Shown here: in pieces, positions 973-25,660 of the stretch | How the letters are laid out: every line of letters starts with the position of its first letter | Position numbering within the stretch: position 1 is the first letter of the stretch | Assembly (NCBI RefSeq): GCF_902652985.1 | Contig: NC_047021.1 | Span: 39,990,001 to 40,054,000, forward strand | Origin: Pecten maximus | Lineage: Eukaryota | Reading direction: 5' to 3' | Length of the DNA: 64,000 nt | Notes under the pieces: model-generated | The model's input: the letters and a program-made list of their open reading frames with translations, nothing else | Database searches by the model: none | Told to the model about the DNA's origin: nothing | Made by a program: the position numbers and the translations under genes

Positions 973-3900
973 AGTCCTATAGTCAACATACTTACGTCAC
1001 TTCACAGGTGCCTGACTCGTTTTATAAAATAATAACATATGGAATACATATAAATCTCATTTATATGTACTCTATATGTTATTATTTTATAAAACGAGTC
1101 AGGCACCTGTGGTCACTTACAGATCTGATAGCTACCGAATAGTTGAAAGTTCTTATTACACATATTTCGCCATATATATGTCTGAATTCTCAATGGCAGC
1201 CACTGTTACCGAAAGTTTATTCTTTAAAGACATGATTAAAACAATTACAACACACGCCATGAATGATCATTTCGTCGGCTCAACGATGACTAACACAAAA
1301 TACGACTGTTATTTTTCTCGGTCAAGGACGAATATAGCTCTACATGTTTGCTAGATAATTTTTTAAGTGTTCACCAAATCAACAAACATGATATAGACCT
1401 AGGCCCTATTTATAATCATACGGAAGATTCAAAATGTAAGCACATATAACAAAAATTTAAATGATACTTACATATCATGATACTGTTAGACCAAGATCGG
1501 AAGCAAACAAATCGTTTCCATTGAGAAACACAATTCTACGCCTCGTTTCCCAGTTTCCCGTCCAAACGTGTAAACATTACAGGTAAGGTGAAGTCCAAAG
1601 GCATTCCGAGGGTGTAGACGTACAAAATTAAAACCGACGTATACCGTTCAGGAATCCGTACTATGCATAACTTTAATTAGTTACCGATGTGCTTTAATAA
1701 CATTGATGATGATAAGTTATTTTTACTATGTATTAAAATAAATTATTTCTTTCAGAAGGCATCGCGCCTTTAATTATTGTTTCATTTCCAAGTTACTTAT
1801 ACTAGTTTATTGTGAAACGTGGAGTAATTATGTCCCCTTACAAAATTGCCTGGCAGATTGAATTTGCCCATGCAGAGGTAGGTAAAAGTGCAGATTATTT
1901 TCCTGTTTTATGCTGTAGTGATGACTTCTATTTTCGTTGCACGGAATAAATTGATTACTTCTCCGCTATAAAAAGTATAGAATACGATATGTTATCGGGT
2001 AACTTTTAATAAAGCAGTAGAATAATTGCAAATATTTTTGAACTATATTTCATCACAGTGTGGAGCTCGTGCGTCCTACCGATCTCGTGACCTCTTGTCT
2101 TGTTCTAATTGGCTAATTTAGTGTATACATGCCGTTTTAATTACTAGTTTTTATTTACATTTGTTACTCATGCATCGTATTCTTGTTTGCGTTAGTATTA
2201 ATTGAGGCATGGGAAGGGGAAAATGATTCTAGTTAATTAATTATATAAGTAGATCTACTGGCCACAGGGACTTGACACAATTTCCAATAAACAGTCCATA
2301 TATATATTTTTTATGTAAATTGTATTATCTATAAATGAATTCAAGTGTCACATGCATTTTTTTTTTTTTTGCAATTCAATCCTGCTTTGATTTAATTTGT
2401 GTAAATTACACGATGTTGATATATTGTTTAATTCCTGACACTAAATTAAGCTTGCCTTTTAATAATTATCAGCATGATAATGAGGGACATACAAAGAGGT
2501 ATTAGAGACTCCCACTAGTTTAGAGACGGTGACCGACACATATATGTCAGCTTTTGTAACTACCACTATATCACTATATACCTGCAGACATTAGGTAAAA
2601 TTGGATATATTTATCAGAGGTCTGCTATTTGAAATAAAATTAATTGTTAACTTCAAAATCATTTGCTATTAAACTTGATTAAGCAATGTAAACATATTCA
2701 GCTTTTAATTGATTCAATAAAAATAAATGAATAAAAAATTGATGAATATTTTTTAAGAAAACTTGCTAAAATAAACTATATTTGATGCAAAATTTTAATA
2801 ACTTTATAACAAAAAATTGTTTCAAAAACTTAATCAGTGCCAATGGAATTTATTCAGCTTAATTGTTCATAATCCCAAAATGAAAAAAAAATTGTATGAG
2901 TATTCTTTGTGAAATGTGGTTCAAAATAAGGTACATTGTAGTATATATTTCAATGATATTTGTTATTTACTATGAACACTAAGATATTACATAAAATCAG
3001 AGACATATATCTGTATATATGTCTCTGATAAAATCAGTGATTATTTATGCAAAATTTTAATTATTTGCTCAAAATCATTCACTGCAAAAACTTAATCAGT
3101 GCCCATGGAATTTATTCAGCCTTTTATAGATTCAAAAATTGAAATGATTGGATGAGAACCACATAAGTTAGTGTAGTTAACTCAATGTCATCTCGCTACG
3201 CCATTACTAACAGATAGAGACAGTTTCCAATCTCTGTATGTATGTCCCTGTTAATACAAACATTGTAGGAAACGGATAAGTCTTTCATAAAAATTAATAA
3301 AAATTCAGTGGTTAGAGGTGACGTATGACACTCAAAGCTAGATTTTGTATCTACTGTTGTAGCAGAAATTAATTAAGCATTTAATATATTTGAAAAAAAG
3401 TGTCAAATGATTCAGATTTTCGGGCCAACTGGGGTTTATTGGTTCTTAAAGCAATCATATGTAAATCTGGAGACTTTTCACGAAAGTTCTTAAGTTTTAC
3501 ACTTAGAGTGGGTTATGTGTTCTCGTAGACTAATACAATGAATTTTGCACATACAATTTTCGTAAGTTCTTTTGTGAAAACCACCATAATCAGAAATTTA
3601 CTTTTACAATCAAAATTGCACTTACAGAATTTTCTTAGGCTAGGTCTCCTGATCTTTTCTCCCCTTTCCTATGACAACAAAGTTGTTTGTATTAACAAAT
3701 TTACAAATTAACAAATTAAGACTTTATTTTCTTCTTATAATGTAGAGATAAAAAAGAATCAATCTACAAGTAAATTCACGTTATTTTAAAGATTTTTAGA
3801 GAATTGAAGTGATTATATAACAAAGCAGTTTTGTTTATTTAGTCGAAAATTTGATAATGAACAATTAGGGAGCATGGGGAACCTACCAATCAAATTTGAA

Positions 3901-4243: not shown

Positions 4244-7200
4244 ATGCCATCTGAACAAGGCCTGGTGACACTGGATGATGTCCTGAGAGCCAAAGAAGTT
4301 CTGAAGAGTAGCTCTCTGGGTGTGTGCAGGACACCGTTGATAAAAAACACTGACATGTTCCCAGGCTTAGAGAATTCTGAGGTGTACCTGAAACTGGAAA
4401 ACATGCAGACTACTGGTACATGGTCATTCAGCCTTTTTACATAAATCAGTGGATTCTAATCTATGTCAATGGATACCTTAGTAGAATATATGTAGTGGAA
4501 CTGGACCGGGTCGATCATCAGCGACCAGGTAGCCCAATCGGTAGAGCATCCGGCTAGTGTTCGGAGGTCCTGGGTTCGAACCCTGGTCTGGCCGTGCATT
4601 TTTCCACTCCTATTACATTTGGTGCCTGTGACCAAACCTTGTTTCAAGTGAGGTGAATACTTGACACGGGGATACCCGAACCTGGGTTGTGAGTTGAAAA
4701 AAATAGGAGGGAAGAGTGTAGCGGAACTGGACCGGGTCGATCATCGGCGACCAGGTAGCTCAATCGGTAGAGCATCCGGCTAGTGTTTGGAAGTCCCGGG
4801 TTCGAATCCCGGTCTAGCCGTGCATTTTACCACTCCTATTACATATATAGCTATTTGTTCTCATTTGAAGATTATTGTGATTATTATCTTTTTATTTTTT
4901 TTAATTCCAACCTTTGATTGATGGATATCTGGGTTTAATGGCATATAAGAGCACATGGGTACTCGAAATACTGTAATCCTGACATTTACAGTGCACTGGA
5001 GAATTCCCGCTTTTTTACACCTCAAATCCTACGTCATTCTATTTACAGTAGGAGTGTATATTTCTGATTTACCAAATCTCAAGTCCCTATTCTCGCATAT
5101 AGAAAGTACCCATTTTATATGTCATTTACTCAGGAAAACAGCTACAAACGTAAGAAACACCTTTTCCTCAGGGACTTAGTTCAGGTGAAACACTTAGTTC
5201 AGGTGAAACACCAGCTGATTGGCTGATTTAGTTGTGGGAGTCCCATAAATGCAATTTGTGGAAGATATAAAATATTGATGTTGCCATAGCTACATTACAC
5301 CTGTATATATACTACCTTCATTAATTTGTAGGTTCTTTTAAGATCCGAGGAGTAGCCAACCAGATGGCTGTTATCCCAGAGGAAGTAAAACGAGGGGAGA
5401 AAAAGTTAGTTACAATATCTGCTGGAAATTATGGGAAGGCGTTCGCTTATGCCCTCAACAAGTTTAGTCTTCCTGGACTCTGCCTGATGCCTTTAACAGC
5501 ACCTTCAAGTCGCGTTCAGCTCATCAAGGTAGTAGACTGAATGTAATTGAGGTCAACACTATTTTATTTCATATTTCATGAAAATGTTTTTTGAGCTGAA
5601 ACATTTACTTTGATGGATATCTATTATGCAAATACAGATTTTGTTGAGGGCAATCCATGGTTTTACGACCTGACCTGGACAATATTTCCCGAGGCTGAAG
5701 GCCCGAGGGGGATATAGTTCAGGGCAGGTCCGTAAAACCATGGATTGGCTGAAACTAAAGTCTGCATTTACATTGTTATATGATTTATATTAATTCAAAA
5801 ACAAAAAAAACTAAGAAAGTTTCTTTTGAATACCTCATCACATCATCGGGAGGTTAATATAAAACTTTGACAGGTTCATGGAATGTTATATTAACCTCTG
5901 CTAAAAATACATCTCAGCACAGACGACATAATTTCTATTTTTAGCAGGAGTCAATACAAGATTCCACAGACCTAACAAAACGTTATAATGACTCCTCAGT
6001 GATGTCATGAGATATTTTCAAGGAAAAAATGATGTCATGTGATCTCATTAGGACCAATGAGTGATAGTGTTACATACCAATCATATAATAAAAGATTTTA
6101 TAACTGATTTCAAAAATCCAAATGCTGTTGACTTCAATGGGTGTTCAGGATATTTTGTTTGCCAATATTGGCAGTGATATACTTTAACAAAATGTGACAA
6201 AATATTTTATACATTACATCAGAAGTCAAACAGTGAAATCCTTCTAAATACTACTCTTACATCTCCCCACCTGTGATTTACCTGTCCTAGCAGTGACACC
6301 TCTCTCTATTCCTCGGTTACATCTCCCCGCCTGTGATTTACCTGTCCTAATGGTGACCCCTCTCTCTATTCCTCGGTTACATCTCCCCGCCTGTGATTTA
6401 CCTGTCCTAATGGTGACCCCTCTCTCTATTCCTCGGTTACATCTCCCCACCTGTGATTTACCTGTCCTAGCAGTGACCACTCTCTCTATTCCTCGGTTAC
6501 ATCTCCCTGCCTGTGATTTACCTGTCCTAATGGTGACACCTCTCTCTATTCCTGGGTTACATCTCCCCACCTGTGATTTACCTGTCCTAATGGTGACACC
6601 TCTCTCTATTCCTCGGTTACATCTCCCCCACCTGTGATTTACCTGTCCTAGCAGTGACCACTCTCTCTATTCCTTGGTTACATCTCCCCACTTGTGATTT
6701 ACCTGTCCTAATGGTGACACCTCTCTCTATTCCTCGGTTACATCTCCCCACCTGTGATTTACCTGTCCTAATGGTGACACCTCTCTCTATTCCTGGGTTA
6801 CATCGCCCCACCTGTCATTTACCTGTTCTAATGGTGACACCTCTCTCTATTCCTCGGTTACATCTCCCTCACCTGTGATTTACCTGTCCTAGCAGTGACA
6901 CCTCTCTCTATTCCTGGGTTACATCTCCCTGCCTGTGATTTACCTGTCCTAGCAGTGACACCTCTCTCTATTCCTGGGTTACATCTCCACGCCTGTGATT
7001 TACCTGTCCTTATATTAACTCATCCCTCTATTCCAGGTTTACCCCCCCCCCCCCCCCCCTGTGGTTTGTCTGTCCTAATAGTTAATAGTGACCCCTCCAT
7101 CTATTCCAGGTTTACCCCCCCCCCCCCCCCTGTGGTTTGTCTGTCCTAATAGTTAATAGTGACCCCTCCATCTATTCCAGGTTTACCCCCCCCCCCCCCC

Positions 7201-10200
7201 CCCCTGTGGTTTGTCTGTCCTAATAGTTAATAGTGACCCCTCCATCTATTCCAGGTTTACCCCCCCCCCCCCCCCCCCACCCCTGTGGTTTGCCTGTCCT
7301 AAAAGTGACCCCTCCATCTATTCCAGGGTTGTGGTGTTGATGTAGAACAGCTCCCCACCAGTGATTTAATGTTGACAGTGGATAAATACGTAGCAGAAAA
7401 AGGCTACACTTTCCTGCATTCATTTGATGAATCCAACCTCATTGCTGGTTATGGAAGGTACTGACCACAGAAACTGACCACTAACTACCACAGAAACTGA
7501 CCACTAACTACCACAGAAACTGACCACTAACTACCACAGAAACTGACCACTAACTACCACAGAAACTGACCACTAACTATCATAGAAACTGACCACTAAC
7601 TACCACAGAAACTGACCACTAACTACCACAGAAACTGACCACTAACTATCACAGAAACTGACCACTAACTACAACAGAAATTGACCACTAAATACCACAG
7701 AAATTTACCACTAACTACCACAGAAATTGACCATTAACTATCACAGAAATTGACCACTAACTACCACAGAAATTGACCACTAACTACCACAGAAATTGAC
7801 CACTAACTATCACAGAAACTGACCACTAACTATCACAGAAACTGACCACTAACTACCACAGAAACTGACCACTATTAATCAAAGTAATTGATCACCAACC
7901 ACCATGCTAACCACTAATTACCATAAAAAAAGATTGACCATATGAAACTGACCAATTATCACCACAGTAACTGACCATCAATCACCATGGAAATTGACAA
8001 CAGAAAGTGACCACTAAACTACTGTACATAAAAACTGACCACACAGAAACTCATTTCTAATTACCACATAAACTGATCACTAATTATCACAGAGACTGAC
8101 CACAGAAACTGACCAATTATCACCACAGAGACTGACCACTAATAATCACAGATACTGACCACAGAAACTGACCAATTATCACCACAGAGATATTGACTAC
8201 AAGAACTGACCATCAATCACCATTAAATCTGACCTCTAATAAGCACAGAGATTGGCCACAGTCTCAGAAAATGTCTTCTAATCACAGTAGAAATATGAAA
8301 ATTTACAACAAAAACTGACCACATAACTACATAGAGACTGACCACTAATCACTGTAGAAACTGGACACATGCCTCTGAAACTGACCTGGAATCTAAAAGT
8401 AGAAACTGACAACCACTCACATGGAATCTCAACATAAACTGACCACTAATCACCATGGCAACTGACGTCTAAACACAACAGAAACTGACAACCAGACACC
8501 ATGCAATGTGAAAGTAGAAGCTGGCCGATAAATTACATAGAATCTGACCACAGAAACTTACCAATGATCACCACAAAACTGACCACTAATCACAATAGAA
8601 ACTGACCAATTACCACAGATGGTATACAGTAGATATTTACCAGTACAGATGGTATACAGTAGATATTTACCAGTACAGATGGTATACAGTAGATATTGAC
8701 CAGTACAGATGGTATACAGTAGATATTTACCAGTACAGATGGTATACAGTAGATATTTACCAGTACAGATGGTATACAGTAGATATTTACCCAGTACAGA
8801 TGGTATACAGTAGAAATTTACCTGTAGAGATGGTAAACAGTAGATATTTACCCAGTACAGATGGTATACAGTAGATATTTACCAGTACAGATGGTATACA
8901 GTAGATATTTACCTGTAGAGATGGTATACAGTAGATATTTACCAGTACAGATGGTATACAGTAGATATTTACCCAGTACAGATGGTATACAGTAGATATT
9001 TACCAGTACAGATGGTATACAGTAGATATTGACCAGTACGGATGGTATACAGTAGATATTGACCAGTATAGATGGTATACAGTAGATATTTACCTGTACA
9101 GATGGTATACAGTAGATATTTACCCAGTACAGATGGTATACAGTAGATATTTACCAGTACAGATGGTATACAGTAGAAATTTACCTGTAGAGATGGTATA
9201 CAGTAGATATTTACCCAGTACAGATGGTATACAGTAGATATTTACCAGTACAGATGGTATACAGTAGATATTTACCACTACAGATGGTATACAGTAGATA
9301 TTTACCAGTACAGATGGTATACAGTAGATATTGACCAGTACAGATGGTATACAGTAGATATTTACCAGTACAGATGTATACAGTAGATATTTACCAGTAC
9401 AGGTGGTATACAGTAGATATTTACCCAGTACAGATGGTATACAGTAGATATTTACCCAGTACAGATGGTATACAGTAGATATTTACCAAATAAAGATGGT
9501 ATACAGTAGATATTTACCAGTACAGATGGTATACAGTAGATATTTACCTGTAGAGATGGTATACAGTAGATATTGACCAGTACGGATGGTATACAGTAGA
9601 TATTGACTAGTACAGATTGTATACAGTAGATATTTACCAGTATGGATGGTATACTGTAGATATTTACCCAGTACAGATGGTATACAGTAGATATTTACCC
9701 AGTACAGATGGTATACAGTAGATATTTACCAGTACAGATGGTATACAGTAGATATTTACCAGTACAGATGGTATACAGTAGATATTGACCAGTATAGATG
9801 GTATACAGTAGATATTTACCAGTACAGATGGTATACAGTAGATATTTACCAGTACAGATGGTATACAGTAGATATTTACCAGTACAGATGGTATACAGTA
9901 GATATTTACCAGTACAGATGGTATACAGTAGATATTTACAGTACAGATGGTATACAGTAGATATTTACCAGTACAGATGGTATACAGTAGATATTTACCA
10001 GTAGAGATGGTATACAGTAGATATTTACCCAGTACAGATGGTATACAGTAGATATTTACCAGTAGAGATGGTATACAGTAGATATTTACCAGTAGAGATG
10101 GTATACAGTAGATATTTACCCAGTACAGATGGTATACAGTAGATATTTACCAGTAGAGATGGTATACAGTAGATATTTACCCAGTACAGATGGTATACAG

Positions 10201-13200
10201 TAGATATTTACCCAGTACAGATGGTATACAGTAGATATTGACCAGTAGAGATGGTATACAGTAGATATTTACCCAGTACAGATGGTATACAGTAGATATT
10301 TACCCAGTACAGATGGTATACAGTAGATATTGACCAGTATGGATGGTATACAGTAGATATTGACCAGTACAGATGGTATACAGTAGATATTTACCAGTAC
10401 AGATGGTATACAGTAGATATTTACCCAGTACAGATGGTATACAGTAGATATTTACCAGTACAGATGGTATACAGTAGATATTTACCAGTACAGATGGTAT
10501 ACAGTAGATATTTACCAGTACAGATGGTATACAGTAGATATTTACCAGTACAGATGGTATACAGTAGATATTGACCAGTACAGATGGTATACAGTAGATA
10601 TTGATATACTTCAGAGTTATGGCTGCCATACTGAAGCGGTTCTTACTTCTGAACTAGAAGCAACAATTTCTGTCCACCTGCACTCACATGGCAGTCTTTT
10701 TTTCCACCCATTTGATGATTTGGAATTGATCGCAGGTTACGGAAGGTAAATTAGCATGCAGAATGATGCGAGATCCTTTTTACTCTCCAAACCTAAGCAG
10801 TTCAGATTGTTAATTTGGATATAAGCATTTTTGCCACAACACCGAAATATGAACCTTGTTATCCCTGGTTAACTGTATAAGGTACTACCCGGAGTAATTA
10901 ACAATAATAAACCCACTTTTGTCTAACAATTCACTGAAAATGCTAACAAATTATATTTTGCTGTACCTGAGAATACTATTACCCCAGTAAAGGTCCTGTA
11001 CCAGAGAATTACATTATCCCAGTAAATATCCTGTACCAGAGAATTACATTACCCCAGTAAAGTTACGACCAGAGAATTACATTACCCCAGTAAAGTTACG
11101 ACCAGAGAATTACATTACCCCAGTAAAGGTCCGACCAGAGAATTACATTACCCCAGTAAAGTTACGACCAGAGAATTACATTACCCCAGTAAAGTTACGA
11201 CCAGAGAATTACATTACCCCAGTAAAGGTCCGACCAGAGAATTACATTACCCCAGTAAAGGTCCTGTACCAGAGAATTACATTACCCCAGTAAAGGTCCG
11301 ACCAGAGAATTACATTACCCCAGTAAAGTTATGACCAGAGAATTACATTACCCCAGTAAAGTTACGACCAGAGAATTACATTACCCCAGTAAAGGTCCGA
11401 CCAGAGAATTACATTACCCCAGTAAAGGTCCTGTACCAGAGAATTACATTACCCCAGTAAAGGTCCGACCAGAGAATTACATTACCCCAGTAAAGTTATG
11501 ACCAGAGAATTAAATTACCCCAGTAAAGGTCCTGTACCAGAGAATTACATTACCCTAGTAAAGGTCCTGTACCAGAGAATTACATTACCAGTAAAGTTCC
11601 TGTACCAGAGAATTACATTACCAGTAAAGGTCCTGTACCAGAGAATTACATTACCCCAGTAAAGGTCCTGTACCAGAGAATTACATTACCCCAGTAAAGG
11701 TCCGACCAGAGAATTACATTACCCCAGTAAAGGTCCTGTACCAGAGAATTACATTACCCCAGTAAAGGTCCTGTACCAGAGAATTACATAACCCCAGTAA
11801 AGGTCCTGTACCAGAGAATTACATTATCCCAGTAAAGGTCCGACCAGAGAATTACATTACCCCAGTTAAGGTCCGACCAGAGAATTACATTACCAGTAAA
11901 GTTACGACCAGAGAATTACATTATCCCAGTAAAGGTCCTGTACCAGAGAATCATACATTACCCCAGTAAAGTTACGACCAGAGAATTACATTATCCCAGT
12001 AAAGGTCCTGTACCATAGAATTACATTACCCCAGTAAAGGTCCTGTACCAGAGAATTACATTACCCCAGTTAAGGTCCTGTACCATAGAATTACATTACC
12101 CCAGTAAAGGTCCTGTACCAGAGAATTACATTACCCCAGTTAAGGTCCTGTACCAGAGAATTACATTATCCCAGTAAAGGTCCTGTACCATAGAATTACA
12201 TTACCCCAGTAAAGGTCCTGTACCAGAGAATTACATTACCCCAGTTAAGGTCCTGTACCATAGAATTACATTACCCCAGTAAAGGTCCTGTACCAGAGAA
12301 TTACATTACCCCAGTAAAGGTCCTGTACCAGAGAATTACATTACCCCAGTAAAGTTCCTGTACCAGAGAATTACATTACCCCAGTAAAGGTCCTGTACCA
12401 GAGAATTACATTACCCCAGTAAAGGTCCTGTACCAGAGAATTACATTACCCCAGTACAGGTCCAGTACCAGAGAATTACATTACCCCAGTAAAGGTCCTG
12501 TACCAGAGAGTTACATTACCCCAGTAAAGGTCCTGTACCAGAGAATTACATTACCCAGTAAAGGTCCTGTACCAGAGAATTACATTACCCCAGTAAAGGT
12601 CCTGTACCAGAGAATTACATTACCCCAGTAAAGTTACTGACCAGAGAATTACATTACCCCAGTAAAGGTCCTGTACCAGAGAATTACATTACCCCAGTAA
12701 AGGGCCTGTACCAGAGAATTACATTACCCCAGTAAAGGGCCTGTACCAGAGAATTACATTACCCCAGTAAAGGTCTGACCAGAGAATTACATTACCCCAG
12801 TAAAGTCCTGTACCAGAGAATTACATTACCCCAGTAAAGTTCCTGTACCAGAGAATTACATTTTCCCAGTAAAGGTCCGACCAGAGAGTTACATTATCCC
12901 AGTAAAGGTCCTGTACCAGAGAATTACATTACCAGTAAAGGTCCTGTACCAGAGAATTACATTACCCCAGTAAAGGTCCTGTACCAGAGAATTACATTAC
13001 CCCAGTAAAGTTACGACCAGAGAATTACATTACCCCAGTAAAGTTACGACCAGAGAATTACATTACCCCAGTAAAGGTCCTGTACCAGAGAATTACATTA
13101 CCCCAGTAAAGGTCCTGTACCAGAGAATTACATTACCCCAGTAAAGTTACGACCAGAGAATTACATTACCCCAGTAAAGGTCCTGTACCAGAGAATTACA

Positions 13201-16050
13201 TTACCCCAGTAAAGGTCCTGTACCAGAGAATTGCATTACCAGTTAAGGTCCTAAACTGATCCTTTGCGGTATATCAAATTTATAAAATCACTGAAATGTA
13301 TCCATTTATGCATTATATTGTATTCCAACAAATATCATAATGATTTGAAATTTGACCTCTTGCTGTGACCTTTACGTTTAGGGCTATAAACCCAACGGTT
13401 TATTTGTGGGTCATTATTCAGCCATACTAATATCCATGTTTGAAGATTTACTATAGAATATATAATGTACCATAGTACTTGTAGGTCTAGAGTAACATAC
13501 CTTTAGTCAGTCACATTTGACTGGAAGGGACTGTTGATATAGATAACAAATAATCTAATGATTAAATGTTGGGTTTCAGATTTCAAAGCAGGGATTTTCC
13601 TACAGTAGAATCTTGGTCCATCAGAAGGACCCTTTCCCTAAAGAAAACTGAAAACTCCCAAACTAGAGGTCAATTTTTCAAGATTAAATATGCTTGATGT
13701 GAAAAGACCTCAGGCAATTTTGAATAGATAACAGATGTAAATACCAACTGAAATAAAAATTAATAAAGGTGAAATCTATTAAGAAGAACATGAATCGTTT
13801 GAATTTCACTTTCTTCTGTTTTCCCAATTTCACATTTTGTCACGTAAAAAATTCCCAATTTAATGAACCCTGGACAAAAAATTGTAGGAAAATCCCTGAA
13901 AAGTGAAAGTTATTTAAGATTCGGAATCTGAATATGTAAAATCTATAAACTCTGAACAGCAGTTTTACTCAAAGGAGACAATCTACATCTTAAGCTTGTT
14001 TAAATATTAATCTTGATTAGTTCATTTTCAATTCTTTATTCCTCTTGTTTATTGTTGACAGTGCATCTCTAGAGATTCTGGAGGATGGTGTTAAGCCTGA
14101 TGTTGTGATTGTCTGCTGTGGAGGAGGAGGGCTGGTGTCTGGTGTGGCTGCAACCTTTAAACTGTCTGGGCTTCCCAACTGTAGAGTGTATGCTGTGGAA
14201 CCAGAGGGGTGTAAGTTCAGAGGTTAAAGGTCAAATTATCTGGTCTGCCCAACTGCAGAGTGTATGCTATGGAACCAGAGGGTGTAAGTTCAGAGGTTAA
14301 AGGTCAAATTCTCTGGTCTATGCTGTGGAGACAGAGGGATGTAAGTTCAGAGGTAAAATTCTTTAAGTGGTCTTCTCAAATGTAGTGTATGCTGTGGAAC
14401 CAGAGGGGTGTAAGCTCAGAGATTAAAGGTCAAATTATCTGGTCGACCAGAAAGTGTAAGTTAAGAGGTTAAAGGTCAAATTCTCTGGTCTATGCTGTGG
14501 AAACAGAGGGTAGCAAGTTCAGAGGTCAAATTATCTGGTCTTGCCAACTGTAGTATATGTTGTGGAACCAGATAGATGGAAGTTCAGAGATTAAAGGTCA
14601 ACTAATCTTATCTTACCAACCATAGTATATACTGTGGAACCAGTAGGGTCAAATGCTCCAGTCTTCTCAAGTGTATTCCCTGGTATCTGATTTACTTTCC
14701 CCATGGGACATTAAGTTTAAGGACTGGATGACACAGTGGTAACACACTTGCCTTTCACCTTAGTCGTTAGGGTTTGATTCCTGAACGAACATGAAATGTG
14801 GATACATGCCAGACAACATGGATTTTCTTTAGACTCTAACAGTAAGACCCTTAATTTGCATGCTTCCAACTGGGCCGACAAAATTGATTGATAAAGTTGG
14901 TATAGTTTGTTTCACAATTGTTGTGAAATATATAAAGTTTACATACATTCAGTTAAAGGACTCTTTTGATATTCAGACAATGTTCATATCAAAATAAAGG
15001 GTTGATTATTTGTGGCTGAAGAATATATATAGATTCAAATCTAGCGGAAACAGATAACTACACAAGGTAGAAATACTCCATCAAAATTGAACTACACAGA
15101 ATACAATGACATCATCATATTGTGTGTACTTACAGCTCCTACCATGTATGAAAGTTTTAAGAAAGGTGAGGCTGTCACCATACCGACAGTAAAATCTGTA
15201 GCTGGAGGTCTCTCGCCGCCATTTGCAGGTATGTTCCATCCGACGGTTACTACCATTGTAAACTAAAAGCTACTTCATACCAAAACCTTTTTAACGGATG
15301 TCAGTTAAGGGGGATAACTCTATGAAAAAAATTGAAATTAGAAATTAATTGAAAGATGTTTTACAAGAGAACAAGGAATTGTAGTCCGAGCTATCTTGAT
15401 ATAGGGATATCTTCAAAGGGACATAACTCTCAGTGATAAAACATTGAAATGAAAGAAAACATCAGTTACACAAACAACCTCATGTACTGTTATCCTATAC
15501 ATGAAGTTGGAGTAAGTCAATTTTAAAATCTGCCAATCTTCAGACATGCAGAAACTCTGATTCATTTACGGGTTGTGAAGATGGAAGTTTGTCCGATTTT
15601 AAAACTAGCAGTACTCTTTTCTCTTACGGGGTTGTAAATTTCACAAGAAAAGGAGTACACTGCTAGTAAAAAATTGCAAGCCTTCCACTTTTTGAAATTA
15701 TAAAAGAGGGAAATTTTCCATTTATTGAATTTAATTGAATTTTTCTGTTCATTTTAACAACTTTGTGAATATGTTGTAGATATTATATCTTAAATCTTCG
15801 TTCAACAGGCAAACTGACGTACCAACACTGTAAAAGATTTGTGGAGGATGTTGTCTTGGTTACGGACAAAGAATTAATAGAGACCATGGCAATGTTTTAC
15901 AAGCGTGGATTGGTTGTAGAACCCTCCGGATGTGCTGCTATGGCTGCTCTTATCAACGGACACATTCCTGACGTAGCCGGGAAAAAGGTTGTGGTTTTCG
16001 TGACAGGAGGGAATGTCACGCCCGAAGAGATGGCAGTTCACCTCAAATAA
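4244..16050 (+). CDS. PLP-dependent serine/threonine dehydratase-like enzyme (serine racemase / threonine deaminase family, fold type II), 327 aa
   Basis: Exons 4244-4415, 5332-5528, [7327-7457 OR 10615-10745], 14062-14210, 15136-15228, 15809-16050. All introns are GT-AG with compatible phases; 984 nt in total. Motifs: LKLENMQTTGSFKIRG (PLP lysine), SAGNYG, CCGGGGL phosphate loop, AVEP, VVEPSG, VTGGN. There is no C-terminal ACT domain. Confidence 0.93.
4523..4594 (+). pseudogene. tRNA-Thr(AGT)-like sequence inside the 5' LTR
   Basis: A box tagcccaatcgg, anticodon arm tccgg-ctAGTgt-tcgga, B box ggttcgaac. Part of the TRIM, not a standalone tRNA gene. Confidence 0.7.
4749..4820 (+). pseudogene. 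tRNA-Thr(AGT)-like sequence inside the 3' LTR
   Basis: gaccagg-tagctcaatcggtagagc...ctAGTgt...ccggg-ttcgaat-cccgg-tctagcc. Intact Pol III A and B boxes. Confidence 0.7.
6257..7326. repeat. About 60-bp minisatellite ending at the exon 3a acceptor; the last units have poly-C expansions
   Basis: Unit ttacatctccccacctgtgatttacctgtcctaatggtgacacctctctctattcctcgg. The final unit supplies tctattccag|. Confidence 0.9.
7327..7457 (+). CDS. Alternative exon 3a of the dehydratase-like gene
   Basis: ccag|GGT...GGAAG|gtac, 131 nt, GCGVDVEQLPTSDLMLTVDKYVAEKGYTFLHSFDESNLIAGYG. Confidence 0.85.
7460..8615. repeat. 23-bp minisatellite that starts at the exon 3a donor and degenerates distally
   Basis: Unit ccacagaaactgaccactaacta. 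Homogeneous to about 7870, then diverged. Confidence 0.85.
8617..10603. repeat. 30/31-bp minisatellite ending just before the exon 3b acceptor
   Basis: Unit agatggtatacagtagatatttaccagtac. Confidence 0.95.
10615..10745 (+). CDS. Alternative exon 3b of the dehydratase-like gene
   Basis: ttcag|AGT...GGAAG|gtaa, 131 nt, SYGCHTEAVLTSELEATISVHLHSHGSLFFHPFDDLELIAGYG. Confidence 0.85.
10960..13250. repeat. 35/33-bp minisatellite
   Basis: Unit ccagagaattacattaccccagtaaaggtcctgta, with shorter gttacga/gtccga variants. Confidence 0.95.
13589..13898. mobile_element. MITE with 16-bp TIRs (hAT-like CAGGG termini)
   Basis: cagggattttcctaca ... tgtaggaaaatccctg. No clear TSD. Confidence 0.5.
14211..14645 (+). 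repeat. Degenerate tandem copies of the exon 4 3' end and donor site
   Basis: tatgctgtggaaccagaggggt|gtaagttcagagg is repeated. Donor-like gtaag occurs at 14284, 14341, 14410 and 14456. Confidence 0.8.
14722..14948 (+). mobile_element. Degenerate tRNA-derived SINE
   Basis: A-box-like gacacagtggtaa, B-box-like ggtttgattcc, body, and a (tac)a-type tail after taaag. Confidence 0.5.
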
Positions 16051-18358: not shown

Positions 18359-20502
18359 AACAAGAGATCCCAGAGGGATCTTGGCGCCCACCATTGAATG
18401 ATCTTTATAGGTTCCATGTCAGATTGATCTTTTCTCTACTTTTCCCTTCCTCTAAGTCTTACTAATCTGTGTAAATTCAGAAACAGCCCTCTAGTACTTT
18501 TCAAACAAGGGTAACCTATATATAAAATTTAAGATTTGGCGATAATGGCTGTCTGTTGTTTTCGGATTGGTCCCAAAATGCAACACCAGGGACCAAGGGG
18601 AACCTACATATGAAATTTCAGAAAGATCCCTTCAGTACCTTCTGTAAAATAGCGATAACAAACTTCAATTGTCAAAATACAAGATGGCTGCCTGTCGGGC
18701 AGGTTGTTTTCTGACTGGTCTCAAAATGCAATATGCATAACTAGGCACTGAGGGCAATCTACAAATGAAATTTCAGAAAGATCCCTTCAGCAATTTCTGA
18801 GAAATAGCGATAACAAACTTCAATTGTCAAAATCCAAGATGGCTGCCTGGCGGCCATGTTGTTTTCCGCCGATAGGTCTCAGAATGCAATATGCATAACT
18901 AGGCACCAAGGGGAACCTACATATGAAATTTGAGAAAGATCCCTTCAGTACTTTCTCAGAAATAGCGATAACAATCTTAAATTGTCAAAATCCAAGATGG
19001 CTACCTGTCGGCCATGTTGTCTTCAGATTGGTCTCAAAATGCAATATGCATAACTAGGCACCAAGGGGAATCTACATATGAAATTTGAGAAAGATCCGTT
19101 CAGTACTTTCTCAGAAATAGCGATAACAAACTTCAATTATCAAAATCCAAGATGGCTGCCTGTCGGCCATGTTGTCTTCCGATTGGTCTCAAAATGCAAT
19201 ATGCATAACTAAGTACCAAGGGGAGCCTACATATGCAATCTGAGAAAGATCCCTTCAGTGCTTTCTCAGAAATAGCGATAACAAACTTCAATTATCAAAA
19301 TCCAAGATGGCTGCCTGTCGGCCATGTTGTTTTCCGATAGGTCTCAGAATGCAATATGCATAACTAGGCACCAAGTGGAACCTACATATGAAATTTGAGA
19401 AAGATCCCTTTAGTACTTTCTCAGAAATAGCGATAACAATCTTAAATTGTCAAAATCCAAGATGGTTGCCTGTCGGCCATGTTGTCTTCCGATTGGTCTC
19501 AAAATGCAATATGCATAACTAAGTACCAAGGGGAGTCTACATATGAAATCTGAGAAAGATCCCTTCAGTACTTTCTCAGAAATAGCGATAACAAACTTCA
19601 ATTATCAAAATCCAAGATGGCTGCCTGTCGGCCATGTTGTTTTCCGATAGGTCTCAGAATGCAATATGCATAACTAGGCACCAAGTGGAACCTACATATG
19701 AAATTTGAGAAAGATCCCTTTAGTACTTTCTCAGAAATAGCGATAACAATCTTAAATTGTCAAAATCCAAGATGGTTGCCTGTCGGCCATGTTGTCTTCC
19801 GATTGGTCTCAAAATGCAATATGCATAACTAGGCACCAAGGGGAACCTACATATGAAATTTGAGAAAGATCCCTTTAGTGCTTTCTCAGAAATAGCGATA
19901 ACAAACTTCAATTATCAAAATCCAAGATGGCTGCCTGTCGGCCATGTTGTCTTCCGATTGGTCTCAAAATGCAATATGCATAACTAAGTACCAAGGGGAG
20001 CCTACATATGAAATCTGAGAAAGATCCCTTCAGTACTTTCTCAGAAATAGCGATAACAAACTTCAATTATCAAAATCCAAGATGGCTGCCTGGCGGCCAT
20101 GTTGTTTTCCGATTGGTCTCAAAATGCAATATGCATAACTAGGCACCAAGTGGAACCTACATATGAAATTTGAGAAAGATCCCTTCAGTACTTTCTGAAA
20201 AATAGCGATAACAAACTTCAATTATCAAAATCCAAGATGGCTGCCTGTCGGCCATGTTGTTTTCCGATTGGTCTCAAAATGCAATATGCATAACTAGGCA
20301 CCAAGGGGAACCCACATATGAAATTTGAGAAAGATCCCTTCAGTACTTTCGGAGGATTAGCGATAACAAGAATTGTTTACGGACGGACGGACGGAGGGAC
20401 GGACGGACGGAGGGACGGACGGACGGAGGGACGGACCACGGACCACGGACGCAGGGCGATTTGAATAGCCCACCATCTGATGATGGTGGGATGGTGGGCT
20501 AA
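18359..20502 (-). mobile_element. Non-autonomous Helentron (HINE)-like element carrying a 155-bp satellite array
   Basis: On the minus strand: T-run, agcccaccatc hairpin/subTIR, (TCCG)n microsatellite at about 20380-20450, about 11-12 units of 155 bp (caagatggctgcctg recurs at about 155-bp intervals), ggtgggcg subTIR, then a terminal gatcc/ggatc palindrome and cttgtt. Confidence 0.85.
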
Positions 20503-21747
20503 AAAAACAGGTCTTGAAAAATGATAATTTTCCTAACAAAAAATCTGATATATGATATGGCTTTCTGCTTAATATGTGTATCTGCGGTTAATGATCAACT
20601 GAAAGACAAAAATGCATTTTTTTGATTCTATGGCTGAGAGAAATATGCATTTAGCTTACATCTTAAATGCCATGTTTTAGTACAATTCAATATTTATAGC
20701 TGATTAAAACCATTTTATTCAATGTTTTTCGTACATAAACAATGCAAAATGATTATGATATTTATCTGCAAATAAGGCCCAACCCTTCTTCATTTTTGCA
20801 GAATCGTAAATTTTTAAATGATAGCTAACTGTGGTTCGTAAATAAGCCCTCCCCAAATCATAATACAGTAAAAATATCTGACCCTAATGGAGAGTGCTTA
20901 TTTGAGGATAAATACGGTATAGGCACTATTATAAACACAAATTGTCTTCTCCCAAAAGAGGAAATATCTGAAAATGTTTCAACCTGTAAGATTTAAATAC
21001 AGTGGACCCTCGATAATCCAGACACCTTCATTCCCAGCCCAAACCATCCAGATTACAAGTTTTCCGGACTGCCTAATTTCGCCGACTTTATAAATAGATC
21101 TGTCCCGAAAGAGTTATTTCCCTTGATTATGTACACTTGAAAACATTTAATTGACACTTCATTTATAGTTTGGGAAATTTTTCATGAACATATATATACA
21201 TATGTTAAAAAATGCATGTTTGAACCAATCGCTGATTCAAACTGACCAGAGGTTTACTGTATTTAATAATTATATAAGCTCATCAAAATACAGCATAACA
21301 CAAAACACAATGAAACTGTTTAACATACTTGTAACTAAGTCAGTCATAGGTAAGCACCATCACTTGATATGATTATAATAGGACAAGGATGGTAAGAACC
21401 ATCAATCATTACACAATTCTCTTTAATATGAATCCTGTAATCACAATTTTTTCTCTGTATATAATTTAATTTTGCTTGTAACAAGTATTTTCATTGGCTC
21501 AAAAAGTTATGTTATCATCTCATAACATAAATAATGACTGTGACGTCAGCGGAGTAATTGTTGTTCATGGGATTTTGTATTTATTGATGTGTTTTTAAAT
21601 ATCTGGAGCAAAATAAACATGTTAAACTTAATGAAAATGTTTCTTATCGTTGTTAATTAAATTATAAGGGTTAACTGCAATATTTTTTTTACGTTATTGA
21701 GCAATAACACAAAAAACTGGGGTGTACTCTTTTCATAAACCGCTTAG

Positions 21748-23258
21748 CAAAGCTAGGTCATTCCTGTAACAGTAGACAAAGCTCGTTCATTCCTGTAACA
21801 GTAGACAAAGCTGGTTCATTCCTGTAGCATTAGACAAAGCTGGTTCATTCCTTTATCAGTAGACAAAACTCGGTCATTCCTGTATCAGTAGACAAAGCTA
21901 GGTCATTCCTGTAACAGTAGACAAAACTCGGTCATTCCTTTAACAGTAGACAAAGCTAGGTGATTCCTGTAACAGTAGACAAAGCTAGGTGATTCCTGTA
22001 ACAGTAGACAAAGCTAGGTCATTCCTGTATCAGTAGACAAAGCTAGGTCATTCCTGTAACAGTAGACAAAGCTCGGTCATTCCTGTAACAGAAGACAAAG
22101 CTAGGTCATTCCTGTATCAGTAGACAAAGCTCGGTCATTCCTGTATCAGTAGACAAAGCTAGGTCATTCCTGTATCAGTAGACAAAGCTAGGTAATTCCT
22201 GTAACAGTAGACAAAGCTCGTTCATTCCTGTAACAGTAGACAAAGCTCGTTCATTCCTGTAACAGTAGACAAAGCTCGTTCATTCCTGTAACAGTAGATA
22301 AAGCTTGGTCATTCCTGTAACAGTAGACAAAGCTAGGTCATTCCTGTAGCATTAGACAAAGCTCGTTCATTCCTGTACCAGTAGACAAAGCTAGGTCATT
22401 CCTGTATCAGTAGACAAAGCTCGGTCATTCCTGTAACAGTAGACAAAGCTATGTCATTCCTGTAGCAGTAGACAAAGCTCGGTCATTCCTGTAGCAGTAG
22501 ACAAAGCTCGGTCATTCCTGTAACAGTAGACAAAACTCCGTCATTCCTGTAGCAGTAGACAAAACTAGGTATTTCCTGTAACAGTAGACAAAGCTCGTTC
22601 ATTCCTGTAACAGAAGACAAAGCTAGGTCATTCCTGTAACAGTAGACAAAACTCAGTCATTCCTGTAACAATAGACAAAGCTAGGTCATTCCTGTAACAG
22701 TAGACAAAGCTTTGTCATTCCTGTATCAGTAGACAAAGCTCGGTCATTCCTGTAACAGTAGACAAAGCTAGGTCATTCCTGTATCAATAGACAAAGCTGG
22801 GTCATTCTAGTATCAGTAGACAAAGCTCGGTCATTCCTGTATCAGTAGACAAAGCTAGGTCATTCCTGTAGCAGTAGACAAAGCTAGGTGATTCCTGTAA
22901 CAGTAGACAAAGCTTGGTAATTCCTGTAACAGTAGACAAAGCTCAGTCATTCCTGTTGCAGTAGACAAAGCTAGGTCATTCCTGTAACAGTAGACAAAGC
23001 TCGGTCATTCCTGTATCAGTAGACAAAGCTCGGTCATTCCTGTAACAGTAGACAAAACTCGGTCATTCCTGTACCAGTAGACAAAGCTAGATCATTCCTG
23101 TAGCAGTAGACAAAGCTCGGTCATTCCTGTAACAGTAGACAAAGCTAAGTCATTCCTGTACCAGTAGACAAAGCTAGGTCATTCCTGTAGCAGTAGACAA
23201 AGCTCGGTCATTCCTGTAGCATTAGACAAAACTAGATCATTCCTGTATCAGTTGACAA
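21748..23258. repeat. 29-bp minisatellite
   Basis: Unit gacaaagctaggtcattcctgtaacagta. Confidence 0.95.
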
Positions 23259-24039
23259 ACACATTTTCAGAAATAACACATTCTCAATTAAAATGCCAAG
23301 AAGATCAGTGATGCTGCATATGAAGGACTTAAAGAAAGGAATAATAAGAGAAAGGAAGTGTTAAATTGTACAAGACGCAATGGTAAGAAACATTTAGGAA
23401 CAAAACATTGACTCCCCTCATTAGCCAGTCTCATTTGCTGTTCTGATAGTGACAGTTTTCTTCAAAATTGTGTTGTTCATCGAGCTTATGGTGTGATGGC
23501 ATTAAGCTTCAAATGTGATGGAGATTTGTGGCATCAAGCTTTTGATGTGTAATGGACATTTGTGGCTATAGTGATTTCGGATAACATGTTTATGATTATC
23601 TTGAATACATCAGTCATACATTTGTCATCTAATTATATCTTTTCTTCGTTTCTGTCACCGTTGAAATGTTTTCAATTCATTTTGACCGATGATAAACATT
23701 TCTATTCAAACACTACAGAATAATGAGCAGATTAGGTCATTTGTACATGTTACAATGTTATATAAGTTAAAATATGGTAAAATATATTATTAAAATCAAA
23801 TTTAATACAAATGGCATTTTAATATTTTAAACATGCATTTATGTGTTCCTATGGCACATTCATTTTACATGGATGGCTTTGATTTCATTTAAAAAAAAAA
23901 AAATCTGATTCTCCCTACTCATGCCATCCCTAGAGATAGACTTGCACAAGTTTGTAGGTAAAACAGAATTCAAGACATGGCCTGGACAAAGCAGGGTTGA
24001 CTAAGGGCCATACATCTGTTTATATTTGGAATGTATCAA

Positions 24040-25660
24040 GATTGCCATCCCAGGACATACTGACGTTGCCATTACAGGACGTACTGACATTGTCATCCCA
24101 GGATGTACTGACGTTGCCATCCCAGGACGTACTGACATTGTCATCCCAGGACGTACTGACATTGTCATCCCATGATGTACTGACATTGTCATCCCAGGAT
24201 GTACTGACATTGTCATCCCAGGATGTACTGACATTGTCATCCCAGGATGTGCTGACATTGTCATCCCAGGATGTGCTGACATTGTCATCCCAGGATGTAC
24301 TGACATTGTCATTCCAGAATGTACTGACATTGTCATCCCAGGACGTACTGACATTGTCATCCCAGGATGTACTGACATTGTCATCCCAGGATGTACTGAC
24401 ATTGTCATCCCAGGATGTACTGACATTGTCATCCCAGGATGTACTGACATTGTCATCCCAGGATGTACTGACATTGTCATCCCAGGATGTACTGACATTG
24501 TCATCCCAGGATGTACTGACATTGTCATCCCAGGACGTACTGACATTGTCATCCCAGGACGTACTGACATTGTCATTCGAGGACATACTGACATTGTTAT
24601 CCCAGGACATACTGACATTGTCATTCCAGGACATACTGACATTGTCATCCCTGGATGTACTGACATTGTCATCCCAGAACGTACTGACATTGTCATTCGA
24701 GGACATACTGACATTGTTATCCCAGGACATACTGACATTGTCATTCCAGGACATACTGACATTGTCATCCCATGATGTACTGACATTGTCATTCGAGGAC
24801 ATACTGACATTGTCATCCCAGGTCATACTGACATTGTCATCCCAGGATGTACTGACATTGTCATCCCAGGACGTACTGACATTGTCATTCGAGGATGTAC
24901 TGACATTGTCATCCCAGGATGTACTGACATTGTCATCCCAGGATGTAATGACATTGTCATCCCAGGATGTACTGACATTGTCATCCCAGGATGTACTGAC
25001 ATTGTCATCCCAGGATGTACTGACATTGTCATCCCAGGATGTACTGACATTGTCATCCCAGGATGTACTGACATTGTCATCCCAGGATGTACTGACATTG
25101 TCATCCCAGGATGTAATGACATTGTCATCCCAGGATGTACTGACATTGTCATCCCAGGATGTACTGACATTGTCATTCCAGGACATACTGACATTGTCAT
25201 CCCTGGATGTACTGACATTGTCACCCTGCAATGTTTAGACATCCGAGGATGTAATGACATTGTCATTCCAGGACATACTGACATTGTCATCCCAGGATGT
25301 ACTGACATTGTCATCCCAGGATGTACTGACATTGTCATCCCAGGATGTACTGACATTGTCATCCCAGGATGTACTGACATTGTCATCCCAGGATGTACTG
25401 ACATTGTCATCACAGGACATACTGACATTGTCATCCCTGGATGTACTGCCATTGTCATCCCCGGACATACTGACATTGTCATCCCAGGATGTACTGACAT
25501 TGTCATCACAGGACATACTGACATTGTCATTCGAGGACATACTGACATTGTCATCCCAGGACGTACTGACATTGTCATTCGAGGACATACTGACATTGTC
25601 ATCCCTGGATGTACTGACATTGTCACCCTGCAATGTTTAGACATCCGAGGATGTAATGAC
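24040..25660. repeat. 24-bp minisatellite
   Basis: Unit acattgtcatcccaggatgtactg. It generates the spurious (SSQDVLTL)n and (STSWDDNV)n ORFs. Confidence 0.95.

What the first reader, a model, noticed from the sequence alone, without database searches (positions are those of the whole stretch)
7327..10745. Mutually exclusive paralogous exons swap the active-site loop of a PLP enzyme (HSF vs HPF)
Seen: two exons of exactly 131 nt with the same phases (0 to 2), intact splice sites and open frames. Both end LIAGYG/AG|gt but are otherwise highly diverged (..GYTFLHSFDESNL.. vs ..GSLFFHPFDDLEL..). Including both or neither shifts the frame, so only one can be used per productive mRNA. Established: this H-P-F/N position corresponds to the 'triple serine loop' that influences substrate preference in the serine/aspartate racemase family, and the exon also encodes part of the mobile small domain. 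Inference: one gene yields two enzymes with different substrate specificity or kinetics through a splicing switch. I do not know of this being described for the family. Divergence with preserved frame suggests both exons are under selection.
Basis: partly seen in the sequence, partly recalled or inferred. Interest (0 to 1): 0.8.

Follow-up and report, generated by a model that had tools for sequence, protein, structure and literature searches.

The report
Alternative exon pair in scallop PLP enzyme
A king-scallop gene for a vitamin-B6 (PLP) amino-acid dehydratase-like enzyme has two old, diverged copies of one 131-base exon, and each mRNA uses only one of them, so the gene makes two enzyme versions that differ in a 43-residue piece next to the active site. 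The pair is real and conserved in scallops, oysters and mussels, is already listed as automatic database isoforms, and is a tidy but not unprecedented case of alternative splicing.

Summary
Observation confirmed. The window is Pecten maximus. A six-exon PALP-fold gene at 4244-16050 (+) has two versions of exon 3, at 7327-7457 and 10615-10745. Each is 131 nt, runs from phase 0 to phase 2, has AG/GT boundaries and an open frame; they share 41% of residues. Using both or neither gives an early stop codon.

RefSeq already lists both forms: XP_033745239.1 (X1, exon 3a) and XP_033745240.1 (X2, exon 3b). A transcript contig joins exon 2, exon 3b and exon 4 exactly.

The same ordered pair is intact in two other scallops, two oysters and a mussel. 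It was not found in Solemya, Mactra, Haliotis or Lingula, so the duplication dates to stem Pteriomorphia. Both copies are under purifying selection (dN/dS 0.2-0.4 in scallops). Amphioxus duplicated the same exon independently.

The exon does encode the 'triple serine loop' position and part of the mobile small domain. However, HSF versus HPF is not the conserved difference, because Mizuhopecten 3b also reads HSF. The enzyme also lacks the racemase base Ser84 (its motif is S-A-G-N), so it looks like a TdcB-like dehydratase, not a Ser/Asp racemase. Different enzyme properties for the two forms are inferred, not shown.

Verdict: new member of a known kind, moderate interest. The scan has found other mutually exclusive exon pairs in this genome.

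The parts
4244..4415 (+). Exon 1: start codon at 4244, ends in phase 1
   Evidence: Exact match to residues 1-57 of P0161 / XP_033745239.1; sequence read
5332..5528 (+). Exon 2: holds the PLP-binding lysine (S-F-K-I-R-G) and the S-A-G-N loop; ends in phase 0
   Evidence: Pfam PALP positions 36-98; alignment to human serine racemase places Ala opposite Ser84
7327..7457 (+). Exon 3a: 131 nt, H-S-F loop, the ancestral-like version, used in RefSeq isoform X1
   Evidence: closest to the single exon 3 of non-pteriomorph relatives
10615..10745 (+). Exon 3b: 131 nt, H-P-F loop, the derived version, used in RefSeq isoform X2
   Evidence: a transcript contig joins exon 2 end, 3b and exon 4 start
14062..14210 (+). 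Exon 4: tetraglycine PLP-phosphate loop; begins with the base that completes the split codon left by either exon 3
   Evidence: Pfam PALP positions 147-194; its first 25 bases are the loose end behind 10745
15136..15228 (+). Exon 5
15809..16050 (+). Exon 6 with the TAA stop codon at 16048-16050
   Evidence: Pfam PALP positions 229-295
7458..10614 (+). Intron between the two alternative exons: 3157 nt, almost entirely 23-nt and 30-nt minisatellites. The 30-nt array ends 13 nt before exon 3b.

Best explanation
This is a mutually exclusive exon (MXE) pair made by an ancient tandem duplication of exon 3. The gene is single-copy and encodes an animal fold-type II PLP enzyme of the TdcB / serine-racemase-like clade.

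Shown: each productive mRNA carries exon 3a or exon 3b. Both exons are 131 nt, which is 2 mod 3, so using both or neither shifts the frame onto an early stop codon. Inferred: such transcripts are removed by nonsense-mediated decay.

Shown (from sequence alignment and a structure model): the cassette encodes residues 124-166. It comprises one beta-strand, the solvent-facing helix of the mobile small domain, the H-x-F-D loop above the PLP-substrate imine, and the start of the helix that returns to the large domain. The gene therefore makes two isozymes with the same catalytic core (Lys61, S-A-G-N loop, GGGG loop) but different lid-and-loop modules.

Inferred: the two isozymes differ in substrate preference, kinetics or regulation, and possibly in dimer pairing. 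The enzyme is more likely a beta-eliminating dehydratase/deaminase than a racemase.

Shown: the duplication arose in the stem of Pteriomorphia, and both copies have been kept by selection. The same exon was duplicated independently in amphioxus.
For: The gene model is identical to RefSeq X1 (P0161), and X2 (P0268) differs only at residues 124-160, by 26 residues. In run X1 a 186-nt contig covers 10613-10745; its overhangs are the last bases of exon 2 and the first 25 bases of exon 4. A contig in run X7, from a different study, joins 3b to exon 4. Double use or double skipping gives stop codons. The ordered pair is intact, with AG/GT boundaries and lengths of 131 or 128 nt, in Mizuhopecten, Ylistrum, Crassostrea virginica, Saccostrea and Mytilus. 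Only one exon 3 is found in Solemya, Mactra, Haliotis and Lingula. The six 3b copies form one clade with support 91/87. In scallops dN/dS is 0.20-0.27 for 3a and 0.21-0.39 for 3b, against 0.06-0.08 for the rest of the gene. In oysters 3b has far fewer non-synonymous than synonymous changes per site (Fisher p 7e-8). Flanking introns do not align beyond about 50 nt. X1/X2 pairs are annotated in three scallops. Mussel transcripts of both types exist: P0172 is 3a-type and P0190 is 3b-type. AlphaFold2 gives both isoforms mean pLDDT 92 and the same secondary structure. The gene is single-copy in the genome. Amphioxus has its own variant and canonical exon pair with matching isoforms.
Against: No enzymatic data exist for either isoform or, as far as I found, for this animal family. 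No read-level junction counts could be obtained, because only contigs were available and the cap was one call; so isoform ratios, tissue specificity and the absence of double-inclusion transcripts are unknown. Exon 3a inclusion in P. maximus itself rests on the RefSeq model and on a related scallop transcript (P0159), not on reads laid here. For oysters I found no transcript or model that uses 3b alone. The clade of 3b copies sits on long branches in a 43-column alignment. The AlphaFold models share one alignment, so their equal confidence is weak evidence that 3b folds equally well.
Confidence: 0.78

Rival explanations
1. One reading: the enzyme is a serine/aspartate racemase, and the splicing switch toggles racemase substrate specificity through the Ser-versus-Pro change in the triple-serine-loop position.
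For: The H-S/P-F residues align with hSR H152-P153-N154. In the review's Table 2, Ser substitutions at hSR 153/154 raise racemisation. The best sequence hit in the PDB is S. pombe serine racemase.
Against: The residue aligned with the re-face base Ser84 is Ala in this gene and in at least 90% of 36 relatives. The residue aligned with the metal ligand Asp214 of S. pombe SR is Thr. The S/P difference is not conserved: Mizuhopecten and Mytilus 3b read HSF. The best structural match is TdcB.
Confidence: 0.1
2. Exon 3b gives a catalytically weakened or regulatory subunit, not a second enzyme. It would act by pairing with X1 in the dimer, or by tuning productive mRNA output.
For: 3b evolves faster than 3a relative to outgroups, with long branches. 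It replaces the family's invariant Val with Thr near its start. Oyster 3b and the amphioxus variant lose the nearly invariant His of the loop, reading DPI and NQ-DN. Relatives with solved structures are dimers (titles).
Against: Scallop 3b keeps H-P/S-F-D-D and L-I-A-G-Y-G. In Mytilus the 3b-type is the form in most RefSeq models. dN/dS is well below 1.
Confidence: 0.12
3. The two cassettes are functionally equivalent. The pair persists because the exons have split regulation between them (different tissues or conditions), not because the proteins differ.
For: No functional data separate the two proteins. Synonymous divergence in both exons (dS 0.3-0.6) is lower than in the rest of the gene (0.7-0.9), as expected where splicing signals constrain an exon (small sample).
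Against: About 20 of the 43 positions are fixed differences between 3a and 3b across three scallops, including charge changes on the helix and a His-rich H-x-H-x-H stretch found only in 3b. Equivalent cassettes would not be expected to hold such lineage-wide differences under purifying selection.
Confidence: 0.1
4. Exon 3b is an unused, decaying duplicate that gene predictors pick up.
For: None after testing. This was the null hypothesis at the start.
Against: 3b is spliced into transcript contigs from two studies. It has an intact frame and splice sites in six species separated by hundreds of millions of years. dN/dS is below 1.
Confidence: 0.01

Closest known systems
Mutually exclusive exon pairs from tandem exon duplication (textbook case in a metabolic enzyme: pyruvate kinase PKM exons 9/10; from my own knowledge)
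   Same: The two exons are adjacent and homologous, have the same length and phase, and one is used per mRNA. Each swaps a short structural cassette in an otherwise identical enzyme. Frame incompatibility removes double or zero inclusion.
   Different: The enzyme family is different (fold-type II PLP). The lineage is different (pteriomorph bivalves, and independently amphioxus). No regulator, tissue pattern or functional difference is known yet.
Serine/aspartate racemase family and its 'triple serine loop' (Uda et al. 2016, 2017, as reviewed in PMC6424897)
   Same: The fold is homologous, at about 27-33% identity. The swapped exon contains the residues aligned with hSR 152-155, where substitutions change the reaction and substrate preference.
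   Different: The second catalytic base (Ser84) is replaced by Ala, and the Asp metal ligand is replaced by Thr. The loop reads H-S/P-F-D and never S-S-S. In the racemase family diversity arose by gene duplication, not by alternative exons.
Catabolic threonine deaminase TdcB (PDB 2gn0) and other threonine/serine dehydratases
   Same: TdcB is the best structural neighbour (TM 0.89). It shares the S-A-G-N loop. NCBIfam per-exon hits are to threonine/serine ammonia-lyases and 3-hydroxyaspartate ammonia-lyase.
   Different: Identity is only about 32%. The loop is P-P-Y in TdcB and H-x-F here. This is an animal clade running from sponges to fishes, named inconsistently by pipelines, with no biochemical characterisation that I found.
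Other mutually exclusive exon pairs reported by this scan in the same genome (SERCA, MsrB3)
   Same: Same genome and same architecture. They are likewise present as automatic RefSeq isoforms and conserved beyond scallops.
   Different: The genes are different. Those claims were not tested here.

Membership tests
Mutually exclusive exon pair (tandem exon duplication) | Two adjacent exons that are homologous to each other | tested here: met
   41% identity over 43 aa without gaps. Each is the only match of the other in the 918-Mb genome.
Mutually exclusive exon pair (tandem exon duplication) | Same length class and same phases, so either exon fits between the flanking exons | tested here: met
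   Both are 131 nt, phase 0 to phase 2, with AG/GT boundaries.
Mutually exclusive exon pair (tandem exon duplication) | Mature transcripts contain one exon and not the other | tested here: met
   A contig joins exon 2, 3b and exon 4 and skips 3a. The exon 2-3a-exon 4 form is RefSeq X1 and is seen in a related scallop transcript, P0159. Absence of double inclusion could not be tested with reads.
Mutually exclusive exon pair (tandem exon duplication) | Double inclusion or double skipping is non-productive | tested here: met
   Stop after 13 codons of 3b, or after 10 codons of exon 4. Removal by NMD is inferred.
Mutually exclusive exon pair (tandem exon duplication) | Both copies conserved under purifying selection | tested here: met
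   Six species carry both copies intact. dN/dS is 0.2-0.4. In oysters the non-synonymous rate is far below the synonymous rate.
Mutually exclusive exon pair (tandem exon duplication) | A dedicated exclusion mechanism (competing RNA pairing, steric hindrance or incompatible spliceosomes) | tested here: inconclusive
   The intron between the copies is 3157 nt, so there is no steric block, and both exons are GT-AG. No above-background duplexes were found between windows 150 nt from the exons in three scallops. No conserved deep-intronic blocks were found. Both are weak tests.
Fold-type II PLP enzymes (Pfam PALP, PF00291) | PLP-binding lysine, Ser-x-Gly-Asn substrate-carboxylate loop and tetraglycine phosphate loop | tested here: met
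   K61, S87, G89, N90 and G187-G188 are invariant across 36 relatives; G189 and G190 are conserved in at least 90%. Per-exon PALP hits. The model has pLDDT 92 and TM 0.83-0.89 to TdcB and serine racemase structures.
Serine/aspartate racemase family (SerR/AspR) | Second (re-face) catalytic base Ser84 (hSR numbering) | tested here: not met
   The aligned residue is Ala, and Ala in at least 90% of relatives. The role of Ser84 is taken from PMC6424897.
Serine/aspartate racemase family (SerR/AspR) | Divalent-metal site (Glu208 and Asp214 in S. pombe SR; residue roles from my own knowledge) | tested here: not met
   The alignment places Glu opposite Glu208 but Thr opposite Asp214.
Serine/aspartate racemase family (SerR/AspR) | Racemase activity on Ser or Asp | not testable with these tools
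   Needs recombinant protein.
TdcB-like threonine/serine dehydratases | S-A-G-N loop and the closest fold | tested here: met
   NCBIfam per-exon hits are to threonine/serine ammonia-lyases, all far below the whole-protein cut-offs because only single exons were scanned.
TdcB-like threonine/serine dehydratases | Deaminating beta-elimination of Thr or Ser | not testable with these tools
   Needs an enzyme assay.

The most novel reading that the evidence does not exclude
The cassette encoded by this exon (small-domain strand and helix plus the loop over the PLP imine) is a modular specificity or regulation unit of an uncharacterised animal PLP dehydratase family. It has been turned into a splicing-controlled switch at least twice independently, once in pteriomorph bivalves more than 400 million years ago (date from my own knowledge) and once in amphioxus. 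On this reading the two isoforms act on different substrates, or one of them modulates the other within a heterodimer.
Probability: 0.3. Interest if true: 0.6.

Novelty: new member of a known kind. Interest (0 to 1): 0.45.

Why it matters
The finding gives a clean natural experiment on which part of a fold-type II PLP enzyme tunes its behaviour. Selection has kept two alternative versions of one 43-residue module in a single gene across scallops, oysters and mussels, and amphioxus reached the same arrangement on its own. The module includes the loop that mutagenesis in serine racemase has already tied to reaction choice. Comparing the two natural isoforms would test that idea in a related but uncharacterised animal enzyme family whose database names are inconsistent. 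The finding also corrects the label: the protein is more likely a dehydratase than a racemase. It does not reveal a new kind of mechanism, since mutually exclusive exons from tandem duplication are well known and both isoforms are already in RefSeq.

Tried and rejected
Junction 5528>7327 and any 7457>10615 double inclusion were therefore not examined with reads. Runs X5 and X8 gave no contig on 3b, which is not evidence of absence.
- The look-up of encoding contigs for the X2 proteins of Mizuhopecten and Ylistrum found nothing on record, because only one product per gene is indexed. The X1 proteins gave the loci instead.
- The search for homologous proteins restricted to the 3b residues of P0268 returned nothing. 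The library holds one representative per 90% cluster, so X2 isoforms are hidden behind X1. This says nothing about how common 3b is.
- The protein-representative search with exon 6 did not return the species' own protein, but it gave the Lingula relative that led to the RefSeq entries.
- The search for competing RNA pairing timed out on the first script. A smaller one showed no duplex beyond shuffled controls in any of three scallops. blastn found no conserved intronic blocks away from the exons.
- Literature searches for this exon pair or for a characterised animal family member found nothing relevant.
- Rejected ideas: a decaying pseudo-exon; a second gene copy as the source of 3b; a shared origin of the amphioxus and bivalve variants (the amphioxus variant groups with the amphioxus canonical exon at 99/95, although the AU test alone, p 0.16, does not exclude the alternative).
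Single exons were searched by reference, and full-length searches used the database proteins P0161 and P0268, which equal the two spliced models.
Full report
WHAT IS THERE

The window has no N runs. It is G000:C7:39990001-40054000 of a 918-Mb assembly in 3983 contigs. The gene's product is identical to a Pecten maximus RefSeq protein, so the window comes from the king scallop.

Reading the sequence gives a six-exon gene on the + strand:
- exon 1, 4244-4415
- exon 2, 5332-5528
- exon 3a, 7327-7457
- exon 3b, 10615-10745
- exon 4, 14062-14210
- exon 5, 15136-15228
- exon 6, 15809-16050

Every exon except 3b is found exactly in P0161 (XP_033745239.1, 'serine racemase-like isoform X1'). P0268 (XP_033745240.1, 'L-threo-3-hydroxyaspartate ammonia-lyase-like isoform X2') is the same protein with 3b in place of 3a. 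The two proteins differ at 26 positions, all between residues 124 and 160.

Both exons are 131 nt, are flanked by AG and GT, and are open in the required frame. They are 41% identical in protein and 50% in DNA. Both align to the same segment of solved relatives. The Pfam PALP profile leaves room for only one of them between exon 2 (profile position 98) and exon 4 (profile position 147).

Reading 3b in the frame left by 3a gives a stop after 13 codons. Reading exon 4 directly after exon 2 gives a stop after 10 codons. Only single inclusion is therefore productive. Removal of the other forms by nonsense-mediated decay is an inference.

BOTH EXONS ARE USED

In run X1 a 186-nt contig covers 10613-10745. 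Its overhangs are the last bases of exon 2 on one side and the first 25 bases of exon 4 on the other. In run X7, from another study, a contig joins 3b to exon 4. This is direct evidence for the exon 2-3b-exon 4 mRNA.

Exon 3a inclusion in Pecten rests on the RefSeq model. It is also seen in a Logan transcript-length contig of a related scallop (P0159, 89% identical, 3a-type).

In mussels both types exist. RefSeq models use the 3b-type (P0190 and its cluster). A transcript-derived protein with 19 member sequences (P0172) uses the 3a-type.

AGE AND SELECTION

Genomic loci of relatives were fetched through their X1 proteins. tblastn and a check of the splice sites show the same pair, 3a-like first and 3b-like second, in five species. 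All copies have AG/GT boundaries and open frames, and lengths of 131 nt (128 nt for oyster 3b):
- Mizuhopecten yessoensis
- Ylistrum balloti
- Crassostrea virginica
- Saccostrea echinata
- Mytilus galloprovincialis

. A UniProt model of Magallana gigas (P0167) reads through both copies and the intron between them.

Solemya, Mactra, Haliotis and Lingula have the same six-exon structure but only one exon 3, which resembles 3a. The six 3b copies form one clade (ultrafast bootstrap 91, SH-aLRT 87). The branches are long and there are only 43 columns. All 3b copies also share a Gly-Cys at positions 3-4 that no other copy has. A single duplication in the stem of Pteriomorphia is the simplest reading.

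Among the three scallops dN/dS is 0.20-0.27 for 3a and 0.21-0.39 for 3b, against 0.06-0.08 for the rest of the coding sequence. Fisher tests of synonymous against non-synonymous change give p from 0.0005 to 0.075. Between the two oysters, 3b has changes at 26% of non-synonymous sites and 84% of synonymous sites (p 7e-8). Intron sequence beyond about 50 nt from the exons does not align between scallops. Both copies are therefore maintained by selection, each under somewhat weaker constraint than the constitutive exons.

WHAT THE CASSETTE ENCODES

AlphaFold2 models of both isoforms have mean pLDDT 92 and the same secondary structure. The two models share one alignment, so their equal confidence is only weak support. 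Residues 124-166 comprise:
- a strand (128-132)
- a helix (134-148)
- a short strand
- the loop 153-158 with H-S/P-F-D
- the start of helix 159-174

By alignment to S. pombe and human serine racemase, this corresponds to roughly hSR 122-164. That is the last part of the mobile small domain (hSR 78-155; PMC6333871) together with the H152-P153-N154 'triple serine loop' that lies over the PLP imine (PMC6424897).

The emphasis on HSF versus HPF is not supported. Mizuhopecten 3b reads HSF, Mytilus 3b reads HSF, and oyster 3b reads DPI or HPY. The differences fixed across all three scallops lie mostly in the strand and helix. They include Val to Cys at cassette position 4 and Pro to Leu at position 10. 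A hydrophobic residue is replaced by Glu at the position that sequence alignment places opposite hSR Arg135; this equivalence is tentative. The 3b helix also ends in an H-x-H-x-H run.

WHAT KIND OF ENZYME

Full-length hits in the PDB are, in order, S. pombe serine racemase (170 bits), TdcB (154), other serine racemases (133-151) and aspartate racemase (108). The best structural match is TdcB (TM 0.89).

The residue aligned with the racemase's re-face base Ser84 is Ala. S-A-G-N is conserved in at least 90% of 36 relatives. The residue aligned with the Asp214 metal ligand of S. pombe SR is Thr.

Relatives with about 50-60% identity to one another run from a sponge and corals to fishes and a salamander. 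Their pipeline names disagree: serine racemase-like, TdcB-like, threonine ammonia-lyase-like, phenylserine dehydratase and L-serine deaminase all appear.

I therefore file the protein as an uncharacterised animal TdcB/SerR-like PLP enzyme, probably a dehydratase. It is not a member of the Ser/Asp racemase family. The gene is single-copy in the scallop genome. The next PALP gene, on contig C1, is only 29-33% identical and also has S-A-G-N.

A SECOND, INDEPENDENT ORIGIN

Two Branchiostoma lanceolatum proteins, P0012 (isoform X2) and P0157, differ almost only in this region: 24 of their 27 differences lie there. The locus L015 carries a 128-nt variant exon at 2840-2967, with N-Q-D-N in place of H-P-F-D-D. 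It lies upstream of the canonical 131-nt exon at 3390-3520, and both have AG/GT boundaries.

The variant groups with the amphioxus canonical exon (99/95), not with bivalve 3b, and the order of the two copies is reversed. An AU test alone does not reject a common clade (p 0.16). The same exon has thus most likely become a mutually exclusive pair twice.

HOW EXCLUSIVITY IS ENFORCED

Frame incompatibility is shown. The intron between the copies is 3157 nt and both exons are GT-AG, so steric or spliceosome-type exclusion is unlikely. I found no sign of docking/selector RNA pairing and no conserved deep-intronic elements. Both tests are weak, so the choice mechanism is unknown.

NOVELTY AND VERDICT

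The isoform pairs are automatic RefSeq models in three scallops. I found no paper describing them and no biochemical work on this animal family. This scan has reported other mutually exclusive exon pairs in the same genome, so the architecture is not rare here.

This is a new, well-supported member of a known kind. It has two points of added interest: the cassette carries an active-site loop known to steer reaction choice in a related enzyme, and the arrangement evolved independently in a chordate. Functional divergence of the isoforms is plausible but untested.

Noticed in passing
window 6257-7277; L005 5930-8750; L006 4400-5370: The minisatellites just upstream of exon 3a are built from the exon's own acceptor region plus its first ~40 nt. 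In Pecten these are a 60-nt unit x12.5 and a 71-nt unit x3.5. In Mizuhopecten more than 20 copies with a 77-nt period translate like the start of exon 3a. Ylistrum has a similar array. The arrays place many decoy 3' splice sites ahead of exon 3a. Whether they affect exon choice is unknown.
   Followed up: partly
window 14165-14444; L006 9936-10484: The 3' end of exon 4 together with its donor site and the first intron bases is tandemly repeated 2-4 times just downstream of the real donor, in both Pecten and Ylistrum. This creates extra donor-like sites.
   Followed up: no
L015 2840-2967 and 3390-3520 (Branchiostoma lanceolatum): Amphioxus has an independent tandem duplication of the homologous exon. 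The variant copy (128 nt, loop N-Q-D-N) lies upstream of the canonical copy (131 nt, H-P-F-D-D). The matching annotated isoforms are P0012 and P0157.
   Followed up: yes
window 10684: RNA-derived contigs from two studies read A where the assembly has T. This changes codon 24 of exon 3b from Ser to Thr and is probably a polymorphism.
   Followed up: no
P0167 (UniProt A0A8W8LNF0, Magallana gigas, 395 aa): This database model reads through exon 3a, the intron and the 3b-like exon in one frame. It is an annotation artefact, but it happens to reveal the oyster 3b copy.
   Followed up: partly
window 10675-10689 (residues 144-148 of isoform X2): Exon 3b of all three scallops ends its helix with an H-x-H-x-H run that is absent from 3a and from oyster and mussel 3b. 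It could be a metal- or pH-sensitive patch.
   Followed up: no
window 7464-13252 and 18574-35988, 61880-63329: The window is unusually rich in long minisatellite arrays with 23-37-nt units and 18-141 copies, plus one 155-nt unit x11.6. These arrays fill most of the gene's introns and much of the downstream region.
   Followed up: no
L014 (G000:C1:37333300-37336300): The next most similar gene in the genome is a second PALP-fold gene, 29-33% identical, encoded in two long open frames and also carrying S-A-G-N. It is not a canonical serine racemase either.
   Followed up: partly
P0001 (744 aa): The top hit of the exon 6 search is a 744-residue protein that matches the query in 7 separate stretches. 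It may be a model with repeated exon copies.
   Followed up: no
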